Assembly: GCA_053919585.1 (NCBI GenBank)
Contig: CM132801.1
DNA length: 64,000 nt
Reading direction: 5' to 3' (one strand)
Origin: Euprymna scolopes
Lineage: Eukaryota
The notes beneath the pieces were generated by a model. That model was not told the DNA's origin. It ran no database searches and saw only the letters and a program-made list of their open reading frames with translations. The position numbers and the translations under genes are program-made. Position 1 is the first letter of the stretch. Each line of letters begins with the position of its first letter. This document shows, one piece after another, positions 1,682 through 62,136 of this stretch.

Positions 1682-1803
1682 GATCAATGGATCCATACCA
1701 AAGAGCTCCTCGTTCACCCCGAGGTAAGCGCCCACAGCCACTGGATGGTAGTACTACTGGACCTATCTTCACAGATGAATGCAAATCTCCTACCAGTGAT
1801 CAA
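1682..1803 (+). CDS. STXBP5: Tomosyn exon A (phase 1 in, phase 0 out): (G)SMDPYQRAPRSPRGKRPQPLDGSTTGPIFTDECKSPTSDQ
   Basis: A polypyrimidine tract ending tccctctgtag precedes 1682, with a CAA|gtaatt donor at 1803/1804. The peptide resembles vertebrate tomosyn GSNDPYRREPRSPRK...DRCKSPTS (recalled from family knowledge). Confidence 0.88.
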
Positions 1804-28162: not shown

Positions 28163-29824
28163 CACAGGTGACAAAAAGAAAGTCTGCACTTGTCATTTTT
28201 TCAAAAACTGCAAATTTAAGCTAAATTTAATGTAACTGTTTAAACAAAATATACCTCATTTGATTCACCTTTTATTCTTCGATAATTTGACCTGTTCATA
28301 TTTGACTTTTAATTGAAATATTCTAGAGTTCATGTCAATTTAAAAAAATGATACCAAATTGAGGAGGCAAAAAGAAAGTCCGCACAATGGAAAATTGTTA
28401 TTTAAATGTAACCTTAGGACATTAATGCAACACAAATACAACAAGAACACGATAAACTAATTAATATTTAGTAGCATAGCTCTTCTGCAATTTGACAGCC
28501 TGCAATTTTGGGAGAATTCCTTGAATTATACTGCAGCAATACTCCGGGAAAAGGGCATCCCACTTTTCCTTAATTTTTGTCAAAAGTACTTCCAAATTCG
28601 AAATTTTAACATTGTGTAGCTGTTGTTTTATGTAATGTTATATGTTTTCGAAAGGATTGAGGTTTGGAGATTGTGCAGGCCAATCCAAACACGGAATATC
28701 ATGCTCTTCCAGGAACCTCTTGACATTGCCAGCTGTGTGAATGAGAGCATTATGCTGCATGAAGATGGGATTATCCAAATTCCAATCAAAGTAGAGTAGA
28801 AAATGCACAGTCAACATATTAATATACTTGATCAAATTAATTCGACCTTGCAAGCAAACTATAGGCCATGGACCATTGGTACTAATAATGCCTCACACCA
28901 AAACTGAACCTCCACCTCTTACAGCGTTGAAACTGAACACCTGGGATTAAATTCTTCGTCTTTCCTCCGACGGACGTACTGCCTACCATCATTGCCTAGC
29001 CTATTGAACTTGCTTTCATCACTAAAAAGCACTTTTGACCAATATGAAGAGTCATTATCTCCATTGCATCTGACGATGTCCAGACGGCGCTTTCTGTTCT
29101 TTACAGAAATCATTGGCTTGTGTCTTGCAACATATCATCGCAAATTAAATTCCTTTAATTTGTTCTGGACAGTAGAAAGAGAGCACTTTTGAACATGATT
29201 GCACTGTTGTTGGATTTTGGGAGCTGTTTCAAATCTGTTTCTTAGGCTGCAGATCTTGATAGCATTGTGTTCCCTGTTAGAAGTAACTCTAGTACCCCCA
29301 GATTTAGGGGCATCACGAACACTGCCGGTGTTTTGGTACTTTTGTACAGTCTTTCGTACCATTTTCCTATCACATTTCAATCTGCGGCCGATTTCTCGAT
29401 TGGATAAACCAGAAAGGTGGAGATTAATGAGCTCCTTACGATCACTAAGAGAAAGTTGTGGCATATGGACTAAATGTTACGTTGTATAACCTGGAACAAC
29501 AACAACAATTATGATTAGAGATGCTTAGTTGCCTGTTGGTGGATATTTTAAACTAATTTAGGGACGATAATTAAGCTGGTTTTAAGCGAATTTATTGCTG
29601 CGAACTTTCTTTTTGCCTCCTCAATTTGAAGTTATTTTTTTAAATTGACGTGAACGCTAAAATATTTCAATTAAAAGTCAAATATGAACAGGTAAAATTA
29701 TAGAGGAATAAAAGGCGAATCAAATGAGATATAATAGATTGTTTACACATTTACATAAAATTTAGCTTAAATTTGCAGTTTTTGAAAAAATTACAAGTGC
29801 AGACTTTTTTTTTTGCCGGCACTG
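28163..29824 (-). mobile_element. Near full-length Tc1-family transposon with long IR/DR-type TIRs
   Basis: The ~230-bp TIRs each carry an outer and an inner aaaagaaagtc(t/c)gcac-like repeat, and the element is flanked by TA. Confidence 0.9.
28461..29464 (-). pseudogene. Tc1 transposase pseudogene
   Basis: Contains an N-terminal HTH (MPQLSLSDRKELINLH..SNREIGRRL), WSKVLFSDESKFN, MQHNALIH (second catalytic Asp changed to His), WPAQSPNLNPFENI and a terminal YATKY*. Broken by stops and frameshifts. Confidence 0.9.
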
Positions 29825-34822: not shown

Positions 34823-35437
34823 CCCGAGTTACCAATATACCGAGTTACCAATATACCAGTAATTTCCAAAAATGCTATATACCAAGTTTACCTCTAAACT
34901 AGTATTTTTCCGACCATGCGTTTTTGTCAGGGAGCTAAAAATAGCTACCCAGTTGCTGCTTAGCCTCGATTTAGCGCAAGCCTAATGTTTTGCAAATGGT
35001 TTCCTTTGTTTCTGCAGAGTTTTGAGTTGTTTTGTAGACTAAAGTAGCCATGAAGCAAGCTAGTGATGAACGAAGCACTTCGACAAGTAAAAGAGCAAGA
35101 TCTAGAAGTTTCACGGTGCAACAAATGTTGGATAAAATGACAAATTCTGATTCAGACAAAGGCGAATTTAATCAGGAGTATATTTCTGAATCAAGTAATG
35201 CTAGTGATGATGTATATATCGATGAAGGAGAAAGTGATGATAATTCTGATGATGCAAGTGGGCCTAGATCAAAATCGAGTGTTAAAAGTAGGAGGCGTGT
35301 AACTCAACCAGGAGATTCTGGTGTGGTTGATGAGGGATGGGGGTCGCAATTTTGTAGCTCTAGATCTGGATTTCACAATTTTGCCCAAGAAGCATGCACA
35401 GGGGCAAATTAGGTTCAGTAGCTCAGGTCTGGTAGGG
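34823..35437 (+). mobile_element. Internally deleted piggyBac-like element
   Basis: Boundaries are TTAA|CCC (34819-34825) and GGG|TTAA (35435-35441). A subterminal 17-bp tandem duplication is present, and ORF 35050-35412 encodes an acidic Ser/Asp-rich N-terminus. Confidence 0.65.
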
Positions 35438-35742
35438 TTAAATTATTTTCTAAAATTTTATTTCAATAAACATTCATCAATGAGTAATATTAGAATTTAA
35501 AGAAGCAAAAGAGTAACATTATAAAAATTCAATGAAATCTTTGCAATGTTTGTAAGATTTTCAGAAAATAAATTTCTTCTGTTTATCGATGAAAAATGTA
35601 AATCTTAAATAGTTTTAGAAAACTTTTAAATTGAAAACTGATCGTGCGTAAATCAAGATTTTAAAAGGTGTTTGATGGTCTTTGCATTTTGGAGGTGATT
35701 TACATTTTCTGTCGAAAATGTTTTGTTGTGTAAACAGAAGGT

Positions 35743-35960
35743 TTATTTATTTATTTGCGGACTGTTATCCTCATCTTTATATTTGTTGTTGTTTCACTAC
35801 ATTTCGACCAACTATTCTTCTGGCCTTCTTCAAGTGTTAAAGTCAGAGGAATACTTAGCCGAAACTTATGAAGCAACAGCTATGAAGATGAGGATAATAG
35901 TTTGCATATGAATATACAAATTACTCATCTCAAAGGATTCCAATAAAAAATGATATATAA
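35743..35960. mobile_element. Penelope-like inverted-arm insertion, same family as 4436-4995
   Basis: It has the same terminus ctcatctcaa..gattccaat..tgatata and the flanking repeat taa(a/g)cagaaggt at 35731-35742 and 35961-35972. Minus-strand 35795-35836 reads cac-TTGAAGA-A-GGCCA..TGGTC-GAAAT-GTA-gtg. Confidence 0.7.
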
Positions 35961-36557
35961 TAAGCAGAAGGTATTTGATTATTTTCTGAATCATTTTCAA
36001 AACATTTTAAAGATTTCATTGAATTTCTACAATGTTGCTGTTAGATTCTACTTCAGTTCTAACACTATGAATTTTAGCTGAAAAAATTCGTTTATCAAAA
36101 ATGAATAGCGAGCTATTATTAGCTATTTTAACATTTTATGGTCATTGAAAGAGTTGACTTTAATATCACTTAAAGTATGGATTGATTTGCCACAAAAACA
36201 ATGCAATTAAATCTGTATGCCATTTTAACGACAAACAAAACAAAAAAAAATCAATTATTTGGAAAAATATTTTATTCTAAGAAAAAACGAACTTACTTTA
36301 TTAAAAAAATCTTTGAATTTTATTCTGAATTCCAATTAAAAAAAATCTCTTGGCTGAAATCTTTATAACGAACAAGAAAAGCAAATCCATTCTTTTCCTA
36401 AAGTATGCATTTTTTTTTTTTTTTAAATCAATTCTTTCCCTCCAATATTGTACAAGCTGCTGTTTTTTGTTTTTTTTTTTGTTTTTTTTTTTTGTTTTTT
36501 TTTTTTTTGTTCCTTAATTTGCATTTTAGTTTGTACCACTGCTCCCTTATTTTCCAG

Positions 36558-37344
36558 CCCCTCCTCCCCCCGGCAAGTCGTCGTCGTCGTCAGCCAATGG
36601 CTAGTGGCTCTTCTCCGTGTGGCGAGGAGGAGGGGGAGCAGGTGCACCACCTCCCCAGCACACACACGCCTGACGTGACCACTGAACCAACTTGCATTAC
36701 CACCAGTTTCTCCTTGTCAAGTGACTCCATTTCAAAACAAACTGACGATGTAAAAACCGCCGACGAATCCTGGACAATTGTCGAGGTTGAACACGAGCAA
36801 ACATCTAGTTTACAGCCTGTTGAGACGCTCAACACACAAACAATTTTCCCGCCAGTAAAGACAATGCCTCATCGAACAAAATCAAACAAGTTACCAAAGC
36901 CGAGTGCAGCAGTTTCTCCAATAAAACGCTCTCCATCTGAATCTAACATTAGAAAACGAAATTCACCCAGAGAAGACGACTCTGTATTTTGCAATAGCTC
37001 ATCTAGTCGAAACCTACACGAAACCCACAGTCCCATGTCACGGGAGGCATATTCTGATGTAAACTTAACTGAACCATATCCTAACTTGGACGCCAGTAGT
37101 CCTTGTGCAGATTCCAAAGACTCAGAACCGTCAATATTCAGAAAAATGAGCTCCAGTCTCAAAGCTATAACCCACAAGGTGAAAGGCAATTGGCTAGAAG
37201 TAGCACATGACCCTCATAAATATAGGCCCCCTCGACGGTTTGGCGATGTCGGGAAGGTTGATGTAATTGATCTAACGAAGGAAAATGAATCATCCTACAA
37301 AAGGCATATGAGCAGAAGTGAAATATTCAAGGGACTTTTTGTAG
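36558..37344 (+). CDS. STXBP5: Tomosyn large alternative exon B (787 nt, phase 0 in, phase 1 out), Ser/Pro-rich disordered loop
   Basis: Splice sites are cccttattttccag|CCC CTC and GTA G|gtatgt. It has 262 open codons in a GC/CpG-rich island with no TE motifs, and its phases bridge exon A and exon D. Confidence 0.75.
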
Positions 37345-37716
37345 GTATGTTGTAAAATATAGTTAAACTTAAAGGTTACAAAATTTTTGTGCTTGCTAAA
37401 ATGTACTCACCGCTTTAACTTTCCTCCTTTTTTCAGGGTGAGAGCGCCACCTATTGCTTGCCATAGCAAGAATTGCGATAAGTCTAACCACTCTTCTAAT
37501 CCTAGTCTATTTGTACTCATAGCACTAACGGCCTTAGACTGCATGCAGGCATCTATTCCCCACCCCCGTCCACCCCCACCCCCACTGGCAGGTGAACGTT
37601 TGCTTCCATAGCAGCTGTTGGTAGTCGATGCATGTACCTGCTTTTCCACTGACCATCTTTATCAATATCTTTTTGTAGTGATTCAGTTTTGAGCTGACTG
37701 TGATTTTTGCCCTCAG

Positions 37717-37797
37717 ATAAGCCACACATAGACAGCTATATTACTATGAAACAGCAGATTCAACACCAACAACAGCACACTTCATATTTTCTCAGAG
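37717..37797 (+). CDS. STXBP5: Candidate 81-nt cassette exon, phase 1-1: (D)KPHIDSYITMKQQIQHQQQHTSYFLR
   Basis: A ctgac branch point precedes the tttttgccctcag acceptor. Only phase 1 is open. The donor GAG|gttgtt is weak. Confidence 0.3.
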
Positions 37798-38574
37798 GTT
37801 GTTCTTCTAGAGCTTTAATAGTGTTACTAAAAAATGAATTCATTTTGATTTTTATAATTACAAAAGTAACAAAACAAAAACTTCTTTGAGTTAATGAATT
37901 AAAAAAAAAAATCTTTAGTAAAAGGAGGGTTCCATTTTAATTAAATCTTTGTGAAAATCTTCATTCAAATAATCTTTATTTGGTCAGTAAACTCAAGAGG
38001 TCATTGAAATTGAACATAGCATAAACATTGTAAGAATTTCCTGAATAGAATGGGCTGTTTCTTCTGTTTGCACAAAGGTTGAGAATAGAAAATTTAATAA
38101 ATTTCTCTTATTTAATATTGGGAGTATATACTTTCTTTCACGCGGGTATTTTCTTTCAAGTAAATTATTTTCTTTTTCTTTTTTGTTTTTTAGTCCATCA
38201 AAAGATGTTCAATTCGCTAAAATAATTCTGGCTGCATTAGTAAATGACAAAATGTGCAAGGGAAATAACTCTTGACGACTTTTTGTCACAAAGACAAAGT
38301 TAGTTTTAATTAGTATTTTGAATTTTAAAATGGGAGAACTAATTCGAAATCTGTTTCCAGGTTAGAAGAATGCAAGTTGAAACAACAAACAGATATTTCA
38401 TTTAATTAAGATTTAATATTTGTAAAATGATTTGCCATAAGATTTTAATTTCAAACTGACAAATACTAAAAAAAAAATTTTTCTTTTTTAAATCTCTCTT
38501 GCATAATTTTTATCTTGCATTTTCTAATTAGAGTTTAATCAAAATTATTTTATTTTGTCTCTGCATAATTAGAC

Positions 38575-38880
38575 ATTAACACGGCTATTCTTGTTTCACC
38601 AAAGTTAAGTGAGGTTGAGTCTGATTAGGACTAGATGGGTAACCATTTGGGAATAAAACTATAATTGTTAACATTAGATTGCAGGATGACAACTGCAAAG
38701 TAGAGATCATCCTCTAATAATATCATTCTCAATGTAAGAAATACGAGGCTGTCGTGTTCAATTTGAAATAATGACAGAATAGAAACTAAATTATGATAAA
38801 CACAAATTAACCTAGTAAGGTGTGGCCTATGTAAATAGAAGGCTATTCCACTAAAGACACGTAACTTGCTGACATTGCAG
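38575..38880 (+). mobile_element. Decayed 5S rRNA-derived SINE-like copy
   Basis: caccaaagttaagtgaggttgagtctgattaggactagatgggtaaccatttgggaata aligns by eye to the 3' half of 5S rRNA. Confidence 0.55.
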
Positions 38881-40135
38881 AATAAAGTACAATGGCTATG
38901 GTAGGCAGTTGAAAGTCAATAGTAGATAATTATGTTAATTTTTTTTTTTCTTTGTAAATCAATTCACTATCATATCATAATGGTATTATAAACTCTTAAT
39001 CCCACAGATTTCAATGAATTGATTTGTATAGATTTAACAAGAAATTGACTGCTCAACAAATAAACTTAAGTCTTTGAAATTTGCAGTTTAAATAATACTT
39101 GATTTGAAATATCACAAAGTGATATTTCCAGCTTTCATATTATTTAAGCTGCAAATTAATATTAAAAAGCAACGAACCATTAGTGGTGTACACTGATGGT
39201 TAATGCATACTTTGGTTAATTTTGATGTTAATATTTTAATTCATGATATGACATAATCATGTAGAACATGACAAGAACTTTCTTATAAACCATTGCATTT
39301 AAATTTCTTGGAAAGAATAATTAGTTAATTTGGGGGGAGGTACTTGTCTGGTTTGATATTTTTATCTTCATCTAAATTGGTCTCTTATGTATGAATAAAA
39401 GTTTGGAAGTATGAAACCATTCATGTGCAATAATTCCTGCTTATTCATTGACATTGCAATTAACATTAGAGATAATTAACCGTTTTTAGATCAATATTCT
39501 GGTCACTATACTTATACACTTGTGTAGTGCTTATTTTATATCATAATTAATGCAATTTACTGCCATTAATTAAATATTAAATACACCAAAGCTTTAAAGT
39601 ATTCATCCATTTTAAATTAGTGTTAATGTAATCCTCTTTTGTAAAGTCTTATTTGCTTCACACAACTTGAAAGATAATTTGTGTAAAAGACAAAAAATAT
39701 ATGTATTATTTAGCAAATGACCATTTTCAGCTTGGTTGTGCATTTTTTCAAGCTTGGCCATTTTTATGTTGAATTTTGAAAAAATTCAATTTTGACAGAA
39801 TTCCCCAAATTTGAAACTAAACACCTGAAAAAAGTCGAAAGTTACCTTTGCTGAAATACTAAGAATCTAACAACCTAGACGAGAAATAGTCGGAATAATC
39901 CAAATAATCCAAATTCTTGTCTCAAACATCCTGAAATGCAAAATAAATAAACTATCAAGTGGTGATAGTTGTTCTATGTTTGGCTTATCAAAAAATGGTG
40001 ATGGTACTGCTGATGCTGCTGCTGGTGGTGATGATGATGATGATGGGTTTCAATGTTTAGAATTGACTAATCCAGGGTTTTGAACATGACGGCTTTCATT
40101 AATGCCTTGCTTGATTTTTTTTTACTTGATTCTAG

Positions 40136-40280
40136 ATAGATGCCGCTTCTCCCAGTCCCAGCCCAAAACAAAAGAAACAGCACCCGCACCCAGAGCTGAA
40201 GCGGACAAAGTCGCAGGCGGCTACCCGCAAAATTCAGAAGGCTCAAAGCAACGCATCATTGGAGGATAATAATGGAGGAG
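40136..40280 (+). CDS. STXBP5: Tomosyn alternative exon C (145 nt phase 0->1, or 141 nt from 40140 phase 1->1): IDAASPSPSPKQKKQHPHPELKRTKSQAATRKIQKAQSNASLEDNNGG
   Basis: Tandem acceptors tttacttgattctag|atag|AT and donor GAG|gtgcta bound a GC-rich open frame. LKRTKSQ..RKIQKAQS recalls invertebrate tomosyn loop sequence. Confidence 0.72.
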
Positions 40281-40928
40281 GTGCTACTGCTACTACTACT
40301 CCTAACACCTTAATAATATTATGACTATTACTATTGTTATTACTTTTATTCTAGTACCACTGCTAATGGCTGCTGTTTTAATATTTCTTTATGAACCTAC
40401 CATTTCTTTTTCAGTAGGGAAACCTTTTCTTCTTTTTTTTTTGGGGGGGGGAGGTGGGGGATAATCTCATAGTTTGTTTTGTTTTGTTTTGTTTTTTTAA
40501 TTTGAGCCAGAGTTATTCATAAAGAATGTACGAAAGTTGTTTTCTGGAACTGATTGGTAAAATTGAGAATTGCTAACATGTAGGAATTATTATCTTCTAG
40601 ATATCAGTATTTAGTTTGACATTTTTTTTTGTTCAATGATAGAATAGTGACACATTCAAAAAATACTGTTTGTCTTTTGTTTAGGAACACAATATAATTG
40701 ACTTAATGTTTTTTAATTCTAGTCAGAAATGCTTTTCTAGTAGACAGTTAAATGAGAGAAGAATCACTTTATAATTTAACACAACCTAAAATGAATAACT
40801 GTGATAAACATTTATACCTCTAATTTACATTTAAAAAAAATGGTAATTAATTTAAGATCATGTAAAATTCAAAAGTGATTCTGATGCCTTTAAAATGTTG
40901 ACTAATTTTTTGTTGGTTTGAAAGTTTT

Positions 40929-62016: not shown

Positions 62017-62136
62017 ATAAAAATGATGGCACGTCATTTTCACGATCAAGAAGTTCAAGCATGTCCAGTCTTGAGAATGTCTCCAAGGAAGCGATCCAGT
62101 GCTTGAAATTTGCAGATTCTTACACAAGAAAAACAG
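62017..62136 (+). CDS. STXBP5: Tomosyn exon D (120 nt, phase 1-1): (D)KNDGTSFSRSRSSSMSSLENVSKEAIQCLKFADSYTRKT
   Basis: Splice sites are tttgttattcttacag|AT and ACA G|gtttct. The peptide matches the tomosyn signature SFSRSRSSSVTSIDKESREAISALHFCETFTRKT. Confidence 0.93.

What the first reader, a model, noticed from the sequence alone, without database searches (positions are those of the whole stretch)
37254..37298. PIAS-type SUMO-interacting motif KVDVIDLT in the large alternative exon
Seen in sequence: exon B encodes GKVDVIDLTKENESS. Established: V(D/E)VIDLT followed by acidic/Ser residues is the prototypical PIAS SIM, and mammalian tomosyn-1 is SUMOylated in this loop and binds a PIAS ligase. 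Inference: exon B adds a splice-switchable SUMO reader to a SNARE inhibitor, which I do not recall being described.
Basis: partly seen in the sequence, partly recalled or inferred. Interest (0 to 1): 0.75.

Follow-up and report, generated by a model that had tools for sequence, protein, structure and literature searches.

The report
SUMO-binding-like motif in tomosyn exon
A real, spliced and alternatively used 787-base exon in the variable loop of a mollusc gene that looks like tomosyn encodes a disordered segment whose conserved end carries KVDVIDLTKE, nine of ten residues identical to the classic SUMO-binding peptide of PIAS ligases, so this splice form probably binds SUMO, but nobody has tested that.

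Summary
Window 37254-37298 encodes KVDVIDLTKENESSY; the preceding G is 37251-37253.

It lies in exon B (36558-37344, + strand, 787 nt). RNA contigs from three studies end exactly at both exon borders and continue into sequence from elsewhere, so the exon is spliced. Exon B and exon C (40136-40280) are both 3n+1 and are never joined. Only A-long+B+D, A-long+C+D and A-short+D read open, so B is an in-frame alternative cassette.

The peptide is predicted to be disordered (mean pLDDT 44). Against a distant relative (dS about 1.0) the last 39 residues are almost invariant. KVDVIDLT shows three synonymous and no replacement changes.

The motif is 9/10 identical to the PIASx SUMO-binding peptide KVDVIDLTIE and fits the ψψDLT class. 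That pattern appears in 0.26% of shuffles of the exon.

Three things remain open:
- SUMO binding was not tested.
- The flanks are as conserved as the motif, and relatives were found only in three close taxa.
- No tool confirmed that the gene is tomosyn; that rests on recollection of the flanking exons.

I rate it a plausible new instance of a known motif class, of moderate interest. First-reader notes on this same window described the splicing module; none on other DNA.

The parts
37254..37277 (+). Codons for KVDVIDLT, the SIM-like core (residues 233-240 of the exon B peptide). With K241 and E242 it is 9/10 identical to the PIASx peptide KVDVIDLTIE.
   Evidence: In the distant relative L003 it has three synonymous and no replacement changes.
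37278..37343 (+). Conserved tail KENESSYKRHMSRSEIFKGLFV after the core. E242, E244, S245 and S246 could supply the acidic or phosphorylatable flank. K241, K248, R249 and H250 are basic.
   Evidence: a single Y to H change across the taxa.
36558..37344 (+). Exon B, 787 nt (3n+1). Acceptor ttttccag|CCC, donor TAG|gtatgt. It encodes 262 residues of Ser/Pro-rich disordered sequence and ends with a G that completes a GAT codon in the next exon.
   Evidence: RNA contig ends, splice sites and phases, pLDDT 44, omega 0.2.
36765..36791 (+). Second conserved island, ESWTIVEVE (residues 70-78), inside the poorly conserved half of the exon. It fits the xLIR (Atg8/LC3-interacting) pattern and also a ψψxψ-plus-acidic SIM-like core.
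   Evidence: Alignment, regex matches.
1682..1803 (+). Upstream loop exon A with two donors. The short form ends at 1723 in phase 1. The long form ends at 1803 in phase 0, and only the long form keeps exon B or C in frame.
   Evidence: Sequence, frame test. The junction itself was not seen in reads.
40136..40280 (+). Exon C, 145 nt (3n+1), the apparent mutually exclusive alternative to exon B.
   Evidence: X2 rec16 covers 40136-40280 with 30 nt of foreign flank on each side, and no B-to-C joint appears in four runs. B+C together gives stops.
62017..62136 (+). Downstream exon D, encoding (D)KNDGTSFSRSRSSSMSSLENVSKEAIQCLKFADSYTRKT. I take it for the conserved tomosyn segment that follows the variable loop.
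   Evidence: Sequence, frame test. The identity rests on recollection; Pfam, PDB and Atlas gave nothing.
37345..37650 (+). About 300 nt of intron directly downstream of exon B, far more conserved than the exon. It holds two invariant TGCATG (Rbfox-type) elements at 37540 and 37629 and is a candidate splicing control region for exon B.

Best explanation
Exon B is a genuine, in-frame, alternatively used cassette in the variable loop of a gene that is most likely tomosyn (STXBP5). It appears to be mutually exclusive with exon C. It inserts 262 residues of intrinsically disordered sequence carrying several conserved short motifs. The last of these, KVDVIDLTKE, is a ψψDLT-type SUMO-interacting motif.

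Proposed mechanism (inferred): in the B isoform this strand pairs with the β2 strand of SUMO, as the identical PIASx core does. The loop then binds SUMO non-covalently. That could recruit SUMO-charged Ubc9 so that nearby lysines are modified in cis, as in USP25. Alternatively it could dock the loop onto SUMO carried by tomosyn itself or by presynaptic partners.

Shown here: the exon, its splicing, its frame, its alternative use, disorder, purifying selection and the motif identity. Inferred: SUMO binding, its consequence for SNARE inhibition, and the gene name.
For: - Exon borders are hit exactly by RNA contigs of three studies, with spliced-on flanks.
- Only A-long+B+D, A-long+C+D and A-short+D are open reading frames.
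- The motif is 9/10 identical to KVDVIDLTIE, a peptide used on its own to compete for SUMO binding, with a single I-to-A change as the dead control. VDVIDLTIESS binds SUMO2 by NMR.
- VIDLT is also the SIM core of MCAF1 and USP25.
- The ψψDLT pattern appears in 0.26% of shuffles.
- Mean pLDDT is 44 with no secondary structure.
- Window versus L003: dS about 1.0 and omega 0.2 for the exon. Residues 231-250 have 9 of 13 synonymous against 2 of 47 replacement sites changed. KVDVIDLT has 3 synonymous and 0 replacement changes.
- Vertebrate tomosyn-1 already belongs to the SUMO pathway through a splice-variable loop site and PIASγ binding.
Against: - No binding data exist.
- The whole 39-residue tail is as conserved as the motif, so the constraint may serve another partner.
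- The downstream flank holds K241, K248, R249 and H250 and only two acidic residues, unlike PIAS, MCAF1 or USP25.
- Relatives were found in only three close taxa.
- There is no ψKxE acceptor site in the loop exons.
- Gene identity was not confirmed by any tool.
- The A-to-B and B-to-D junctions were deduced from phases, not read directly.
Confidence: 0.45

Rival explanations
1. The conserved tail (PPRRFGDVGKVDVIDLTKENESSYKRHMSRSEIFKGLFV) is one larger binding or autoregulatory module. It might be a strand plus short helix that packs on the protein's own β-propellers or on a SNARE or other partner. On this reading the likeness to a SIM is coincidental.
For: Conservation is uniform over 39 residues and does not peak on VIDLT. 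The flank is basic rather than acidic. AlphaFold places a short helix at 256-259 just after the motif, at low confidence. The loose SIM core occurs in about 20% of shuffles.
Against: Nine of ten residues match a peptide that binds SUMO on its own. The extended ψψDLT pattern is rare by chance (0.26%). The segment is predicted disordered, and a disordered copy of that core should still be able to bind SUMO.
Confidence: 0.3
2. The motif binds SUMO in vitro but has no physiological role. Exon B acts mainly as a disordered spacer or phospho-regulated linker (PKA-type sites RKRNS and RKMS) that tunes tomosyn activity, as the vertebrate variable loop does.
For: Several other conserved islands and two [RK][RK]x[ST] sites lie in exon B. 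The vertebrate loop is regulated by PKA near the SUMO site. The paper read treats SUMO mainly as a nuclear regulator and counts only a few known neuronal substrates.
Against: Strong purifying selection acts on the exact core. Synaptic SUMO substrates including tomosyn are documented.
Confidence: 0.2
3. Exon B is not a productive coding exon. It would be transcribed noise, a retained fragment, or part of another transcript.
For: The protein searches found exon B only as open reading frames called on genomic contigs, never within a longer or named protein. Some unspliced reads cross both borders (X3 rec22, X1 rec6).
Against: Exact splice borders appear in three studies, with 178 nt and 933-1593 nt of spliced flanks. 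A 262-codon open frame is kept in all relatives at omega 0.2 with dS about 1. The exon phases are compatible with the neighbouring exons.
Confidence: 0.05

Closest known systems
PIASx/PIAS2 SUMO-interacting motif (KVDVIDLTIESSSDEEEDPPAKR)
   Same: KVDVIDLT is identical, and 9 of the first 10 residues match. Both lie in a disordered region, and the core is followed by Glu and Ser residues.
   Different: Position 9 is K instead of I. The long acidic/phospho-Ser run SSSDEEED is replaced by NESSYKRH. The host protein is a cytosolic SNARE regulator rather than a SUMO ligase. Nothing suggests common descent beyond the 10 residues.
USP25 SIM (NVIDLTGDDK), which directs SUMO2/3 conjugation to a nearby lysine
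   Same: The VIDLT core sits in a cytosolic protein with lysines a few residues away. In exon B these are K233, K241 and K248. This is the model for SIM-directed modification in cis.
   Different: USP25 has an acidic GDD flank and a mapped acceptor, K99. No acceptor is known here.
Vertebrate tomosyn-1 variable loop with SUMO acceptor K730 and PIASγ binding
   Same: In both, a splice-variable exon of the same loop, just upstream of the conserved segment, brings in an element of the SUMO pathway.
   Different: Vertebrates carry an acceptor lysine (LKPD), not a SIM. That site is absent from fly and worm tomosyn, and no ψKxE exists in the loop exons of this window. The elements are analogous rather than homologous.
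MCAF1/ATF7IP SIM (GVIDLTMDDEE)
   Same: It has the same ψψDLT core in a disordered stretch.
   Different: It is a nuclear protein with a strongly acidic flank.

Membership tests
SUMO-interacting motif, ψψDLT (SIMb) class | Hydrophobic core [PILVM][ILVM]-D-L-T, or more broadly [VI]x[VI][VI] | tested here: met
   VIDLT at residues 236-240 and VDVI at 234-237. The core is identical to those of PIASx, MCAF1 and USP25.
SUMO-interacting motif, ψψDLT (SIMb) class | Acidic or phosphorylatable residues flanking the core | tested here: inconclusive
   D235, D238, E242, E244, S245 and S246 are present, but K241, K248, R249 and H250 intervene. The flank is much weaker than the SSSDEEED of PIASx.
SUMO-interacting motif, ψψDLT (SIMb) class | Lies in an accessible, disordered region | tested here: met
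   AlphaFold2 mean pLDDT is 44 with no strand or helix around the motif. The alignment has only 4 rows, so this is a soft result.
SUMO-interacting motif, ψψDLT (SIMb) class | Evolutionary conservation of the core | tested here: met
   The core is invariant in the relatives at dS 0.19 and at dS about 1.0, with 3 synonymous and 0 replacement changes. It is not more conserved than its flanks, and the depth is limited to close taxa.
SUMO-interacting motif, ψψDLT (SIMb) class | Binds SUMO non-covalently, and binding is lost on mutating the core | not testable with these tools
   This needs ITC, NMR or pull-down.
Tomosyn / STXBP5 | N-terminal WD40 double propeller (Lgl family) and C-terminal R-SNARE motif | not testable with these tools
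   These exons lie outside the window. Pfam, PDB and Atlas give nothing on loop exons A, C and D.
Tomosyn / STXBP5 | Variable, alternatively spliced loop followed by the conserved SFSRSRSSS...EAI..L.F...TRK segment | tested here: inconclusive
   The window has alternative exons A, B and C and an exon D that reads DKNDGTSFSRSRSSSMSSLENVSKEAIQCLKFADSYTRKT. The match to vertebrate tomosyn is from my recollection only, and a literature string search found nothing.

The most novel reading that the evidence does not exclude
Exon B is a lineage-specific cassette whose splicing is switched by neuronal factors and which carries several short motifs: an xLIR-like ESWTIVEVE, PKA-type sites and a PIAS-identical SIM. 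It turns tomosyn from a SUMO substrate into a SUMO reader. The decoy SNARE is then tethered to SUMOylated release-site proteins, or modified in cis, only in cells that include the exon. Inclusion would be set by the ultraconserved downstream intronic element with its two UGCAUG sites. This would be a convergent solution in molluscs to the vertebrate arrangement of a splice-variable SUMO acceptor in the same loop.
Probability: 0.15. Interest if true: 0.75.

Novelty: new member of a known kind. Interest (0 to 1): 0.45.

Why it matters
Tomosyn is a brake on vesicle fusion, and its variable loop is where vertebrates place PKA and SUMO regulation. If one mollusc splice form carries a working SUMO-binding motif, cells could choose by splicing whether this brake responds to SUMO signals. 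The link between SUMO and transmitter release would then be testable with a single four-residue mutant. It would also be a clear case of two lineages placing different SUMO-pathway elements, an acceptor and a reader, in the same splice-variable loop. As it stands this is a well-supported motif prediction in one lineage, not a shown function.

Tried and rejected
- **Exhaustive phmmer** of exon B against 1.84 billion representatives gave only one cluster of near relatives.
- **Three word-index protein searches** (whole exon; the longer ORF P0002, to reach up to 635 aa; the C-terminal block alone at E up to 10) gave only P0001 and P0003. The length filter kept full-length isoforms out of reach. 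Even the source species' own exon is not in that collection, so the blank says little about squids or other molluscs.
- **JGI metagenome scan** with the alignment gave nothing.
- **Gene identity.** Pfam on exon B gave only a sub-threshold KIAA1549 hit. Pfam, PDB and Atlas on exons A, C and D gave nothing. PDB on the motif peptide gave nothing. Literature string searches for the flanking peptide gave nothing relevant.
- **Editing-complement idea.** I asked whether the conserved intron pairs with exon B. Only short, non-nested 12-15 nt matches were found, and there is no covariation in the intron fold. Rejected for lack of support.
- **Rfam** on 35500-39000 gave only sub-threshold hits.
- **SIM-SUMO complex prediction** could not be run with the structure tool.
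- **The ORF at 35050-35412** (acidic and Ser-rich) was considered as another exon. RNA depth there comes from short repeat-like contigs, so I left it out.

Full report
**Observation.** The + strand at 37251-37298 reads G-KVDVIDLTKENESS-Y in the only long open frame of the region.

**The exon.** The frame is bounded by a polypyrimidine tract with ttttccag|CCC at 36558 and by TAG|gtatgt after 37344. I laid Logan contigs of four RNA or probable-RNA runs from four studies on 35000-40900.
- X2 rec15 matches 36558-37345 with 30 and 38 foreign bases at its ends.
- X7 rec32 (1898 nt) matches 36558-37344 with 178 nt on the upstream side and 933 nt on the downstream side that lie nowhere in the laid stretch.
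- X3 rec23 starts at 36558, and X3 rec24 ends at 37344 with 1593 further bases.

Both borders are therefore used as splice sites in three studies. In the run search, RNA runs held 0.66-0.72 of the sampled words of 36400-37500. That equals the exon's share of the stretch (787 of 1101). Unclassified runs held about 0.8. A few low-depth contigs cross the borders unspliced (X3 rec22, X1 rec6).

**Alternative use and frame.** Exon C is defined by X2 rec16 as 40136-40280, with foreign flanks. No B-to-C joint is listed in any run, although joints with sides of 20-22 nt are listed elsewhere. Exon C has depth only in X2, while exon B has depth in all four runs.

Exon B (787 nt) and exon C (145 nt) are both 3n+1. 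Both end in a G that completes GAT with the first two bases of exon D (62017-62136). Upstream exon A has two donors: 1723 (phase 1) and 1803 (phase 0). Of seven combinations, only A-long+B+D, A-long+C+D and A-short+D are free of stops.

This shows that B is in frame in the reading claimed and that B and C are alternatives. The A-B and B-D junctions themselves are deduced, not read, because the reads tool allowed one 6-kb call.

**Gene identity.** No other exons of the gene lie in the window. Pfam, PDB and the Atlas are blank on exons A, C and D. I take the gene for tomosyn because exon D (…SFSRSRSSSMSSLENVSKEAIQCLKFADSYTRKT) and exon A (…DPYQRAPRSPR…) resemble what I remember of the segments that flank the variable loop of vertebrate STXBP5. 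That is recollection, not a test. I put it at about 0.9.

**Relatives and selection.** The exhaustive protein search found one cluster. The word searches found P0001 and P0002 (about 90% and 87% identical) and P0003 (69%). All are open reading frames called on genomic contigs (L001-L005).

In the alignment conservation is patchy. The first 100 residues drift. Conserved islands include:
- ESWTIVEVE
- PVKTxPHRTKSNKLPKP
- PIKRSPSESNIRKRNS
- SREAYSDVNLT
- KDSEPSIxRKMSSSLKA
- the last 39 residues, which are near-invariant

Nei-Gojobori counts for the window against L003 give dS about 1.0, dN 0.205 and omega 0.2. In residues 231-250, 9 of 13 synonymous sites differ against 2 of 47 replacement sites. 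KVDVIDLT has AAG to AAA, CTA to CTC and ACG to ACA, and no replacement. The constraint therefore acts on the protein.

It is not specific to the motif, because its flanks are equally fixed.

**Is it a SIM?**
- The PIASx peptide is KVDVIDLTIESSSDEEEDPPAKR.
- KVDVIDLTIE alone is used as a SUMO-binding competitor, with KVDVADLTIE as the inactive control.
- VDVIDLTIESS binds SUMO2 by NMR.
- The exon B sequence KVDVIDLTKE matches 9 of 10 of these residues.
- VIDLT is also the core in MCAF1 and USP25.
- The ψψDLT pattern occurs in 0.26% of shuffles of the exon. The bare [VI]x[VI][VI] core occurs in about 20%.
- AlphaFold2 on the four-row alignment gives mean pLDDT 44 and no secondary structure near the motif. 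This fits an exposed linear motif.

Against this, the flank after the core is K-E-N-E-S-S-Y-K-R-H, with two acidic residues and two serines among four basic ones. That is much less acidic than in PIAS, MCAF1 or USP25. I put in-vitro SUMO binding at about 0.65 and a physiological role at about 0.3-0.45.

**Context in the SUMO pathway.** Mouse tomosyn-1 is SUMOylated at K730, a site present only in splice variants m1 and b1 and absent from fly and worm tomosyn. It also binds PIASγ. Rat tomosyn-1 is also modified at K298, and syntaxin-1 has putative SIMs.

No ψKxE site exists in loop exons A, B, C or D of this window. The papers found on tomosyn and SUMO, and on tomosyn and octopus, describe no SIM in tomosyn. 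The most economical mechanism is non-covalent SUMO binding by the B loop. It would act either in cis, through SIM-directed conjugation as in USP25 or docking on a SUMO carried by the propeller, or in trans on SUMOylated partners. This is inference.

**Side observations.**
- The first 300 nt or so of the downstream intron are almost identical between the window and L003, although synonymous sites in the exon are near saturation. Over 400 nt the identity is 81%, against 74% for the exon and 53% for the upstream intron.
- That intron segment holds two invariant TGCATG elements 89 nt apart. The background is about one + strand site per 3 kb. This fits a regulated, probably neuronal, cassette exon.
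- The element shows no covariation and no convincing pairing with the exon.
- ESWTIVEVE fits the xLIR pattern.

**Verdict.** The SIM reading is plausible and specific enough to test with one peptide and one mutant. It remains a motif prediction with shallow phylogenetic support and a gene name that no tool confirmed. It is a new instance of a known motif class, in a protein already tied to SUMO. Interest is moderate.

Noticed in passing
window 37345-37650: About 300 nt of intron directly downstream of exon B are nearly identical in a relative whose synonymous sites are saturated (dS about 1). The intron is thus more conserved than the exon. It holds two invariant TGCATG (Rbfox-type) elements at 37540 and 37629 and a repeated TTGCTTNCCATAGCA motif. 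It is probably a splicing control region.
   Followed up: partly
window 36765-36791: A conserved island, ESWTIVEVE (ETWTIIEVD in the distant relative), sits in the otherwise drifting half of exon B. It fits the xLIR (Atg8/LC3-interacting) pattern and also a ψψxψ-plus-acidic SIM-like core.
   Followed up: partly
window 1682-1803, 36558-37344, 40136-40280, 62017-62136: There is a phase logic among the loop exons. Exon A has two donors (phase 1 at 1723, phase 0 at 1803), and exons B and C are both 3n+1. Only A-short+D, A-long+B+D and A-long+C+D are open.
   Followed up: yes
window 40130-40140: In run X2 the exon C contig starts at 40136, after the first AG of the TAG-A-TAG pair. Use of the second acceptor was not seen in the contigs laid.
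   Followed up: partly
window 36960-36975 and 37146-37160: Exon B contains two conserved PKA-type sites, RKRNS and RKMSS. This recalls the PKA site in the vertebrate tomosyn loop.
   Followed up: no
window 35050-35412 and 35590-35985: An acidic, Ser-rich ORF resembles the N-terminus of a domesticated or decayed transposase. Next to it is a stretch with very high RNA contig depth and many loose ends. This is repeat or transposon sequence, not part of the gene.
   Followed up: no
window 28638-29464 (- strand): ORFs here have helix-turn-helix and DDE-like Tc1/mariner transposase features (…NPFENI…, …LSDRKELINLHLSGLSNREIGRRL…), suggesting a decayed transposon in the intron.
   Followed up: no
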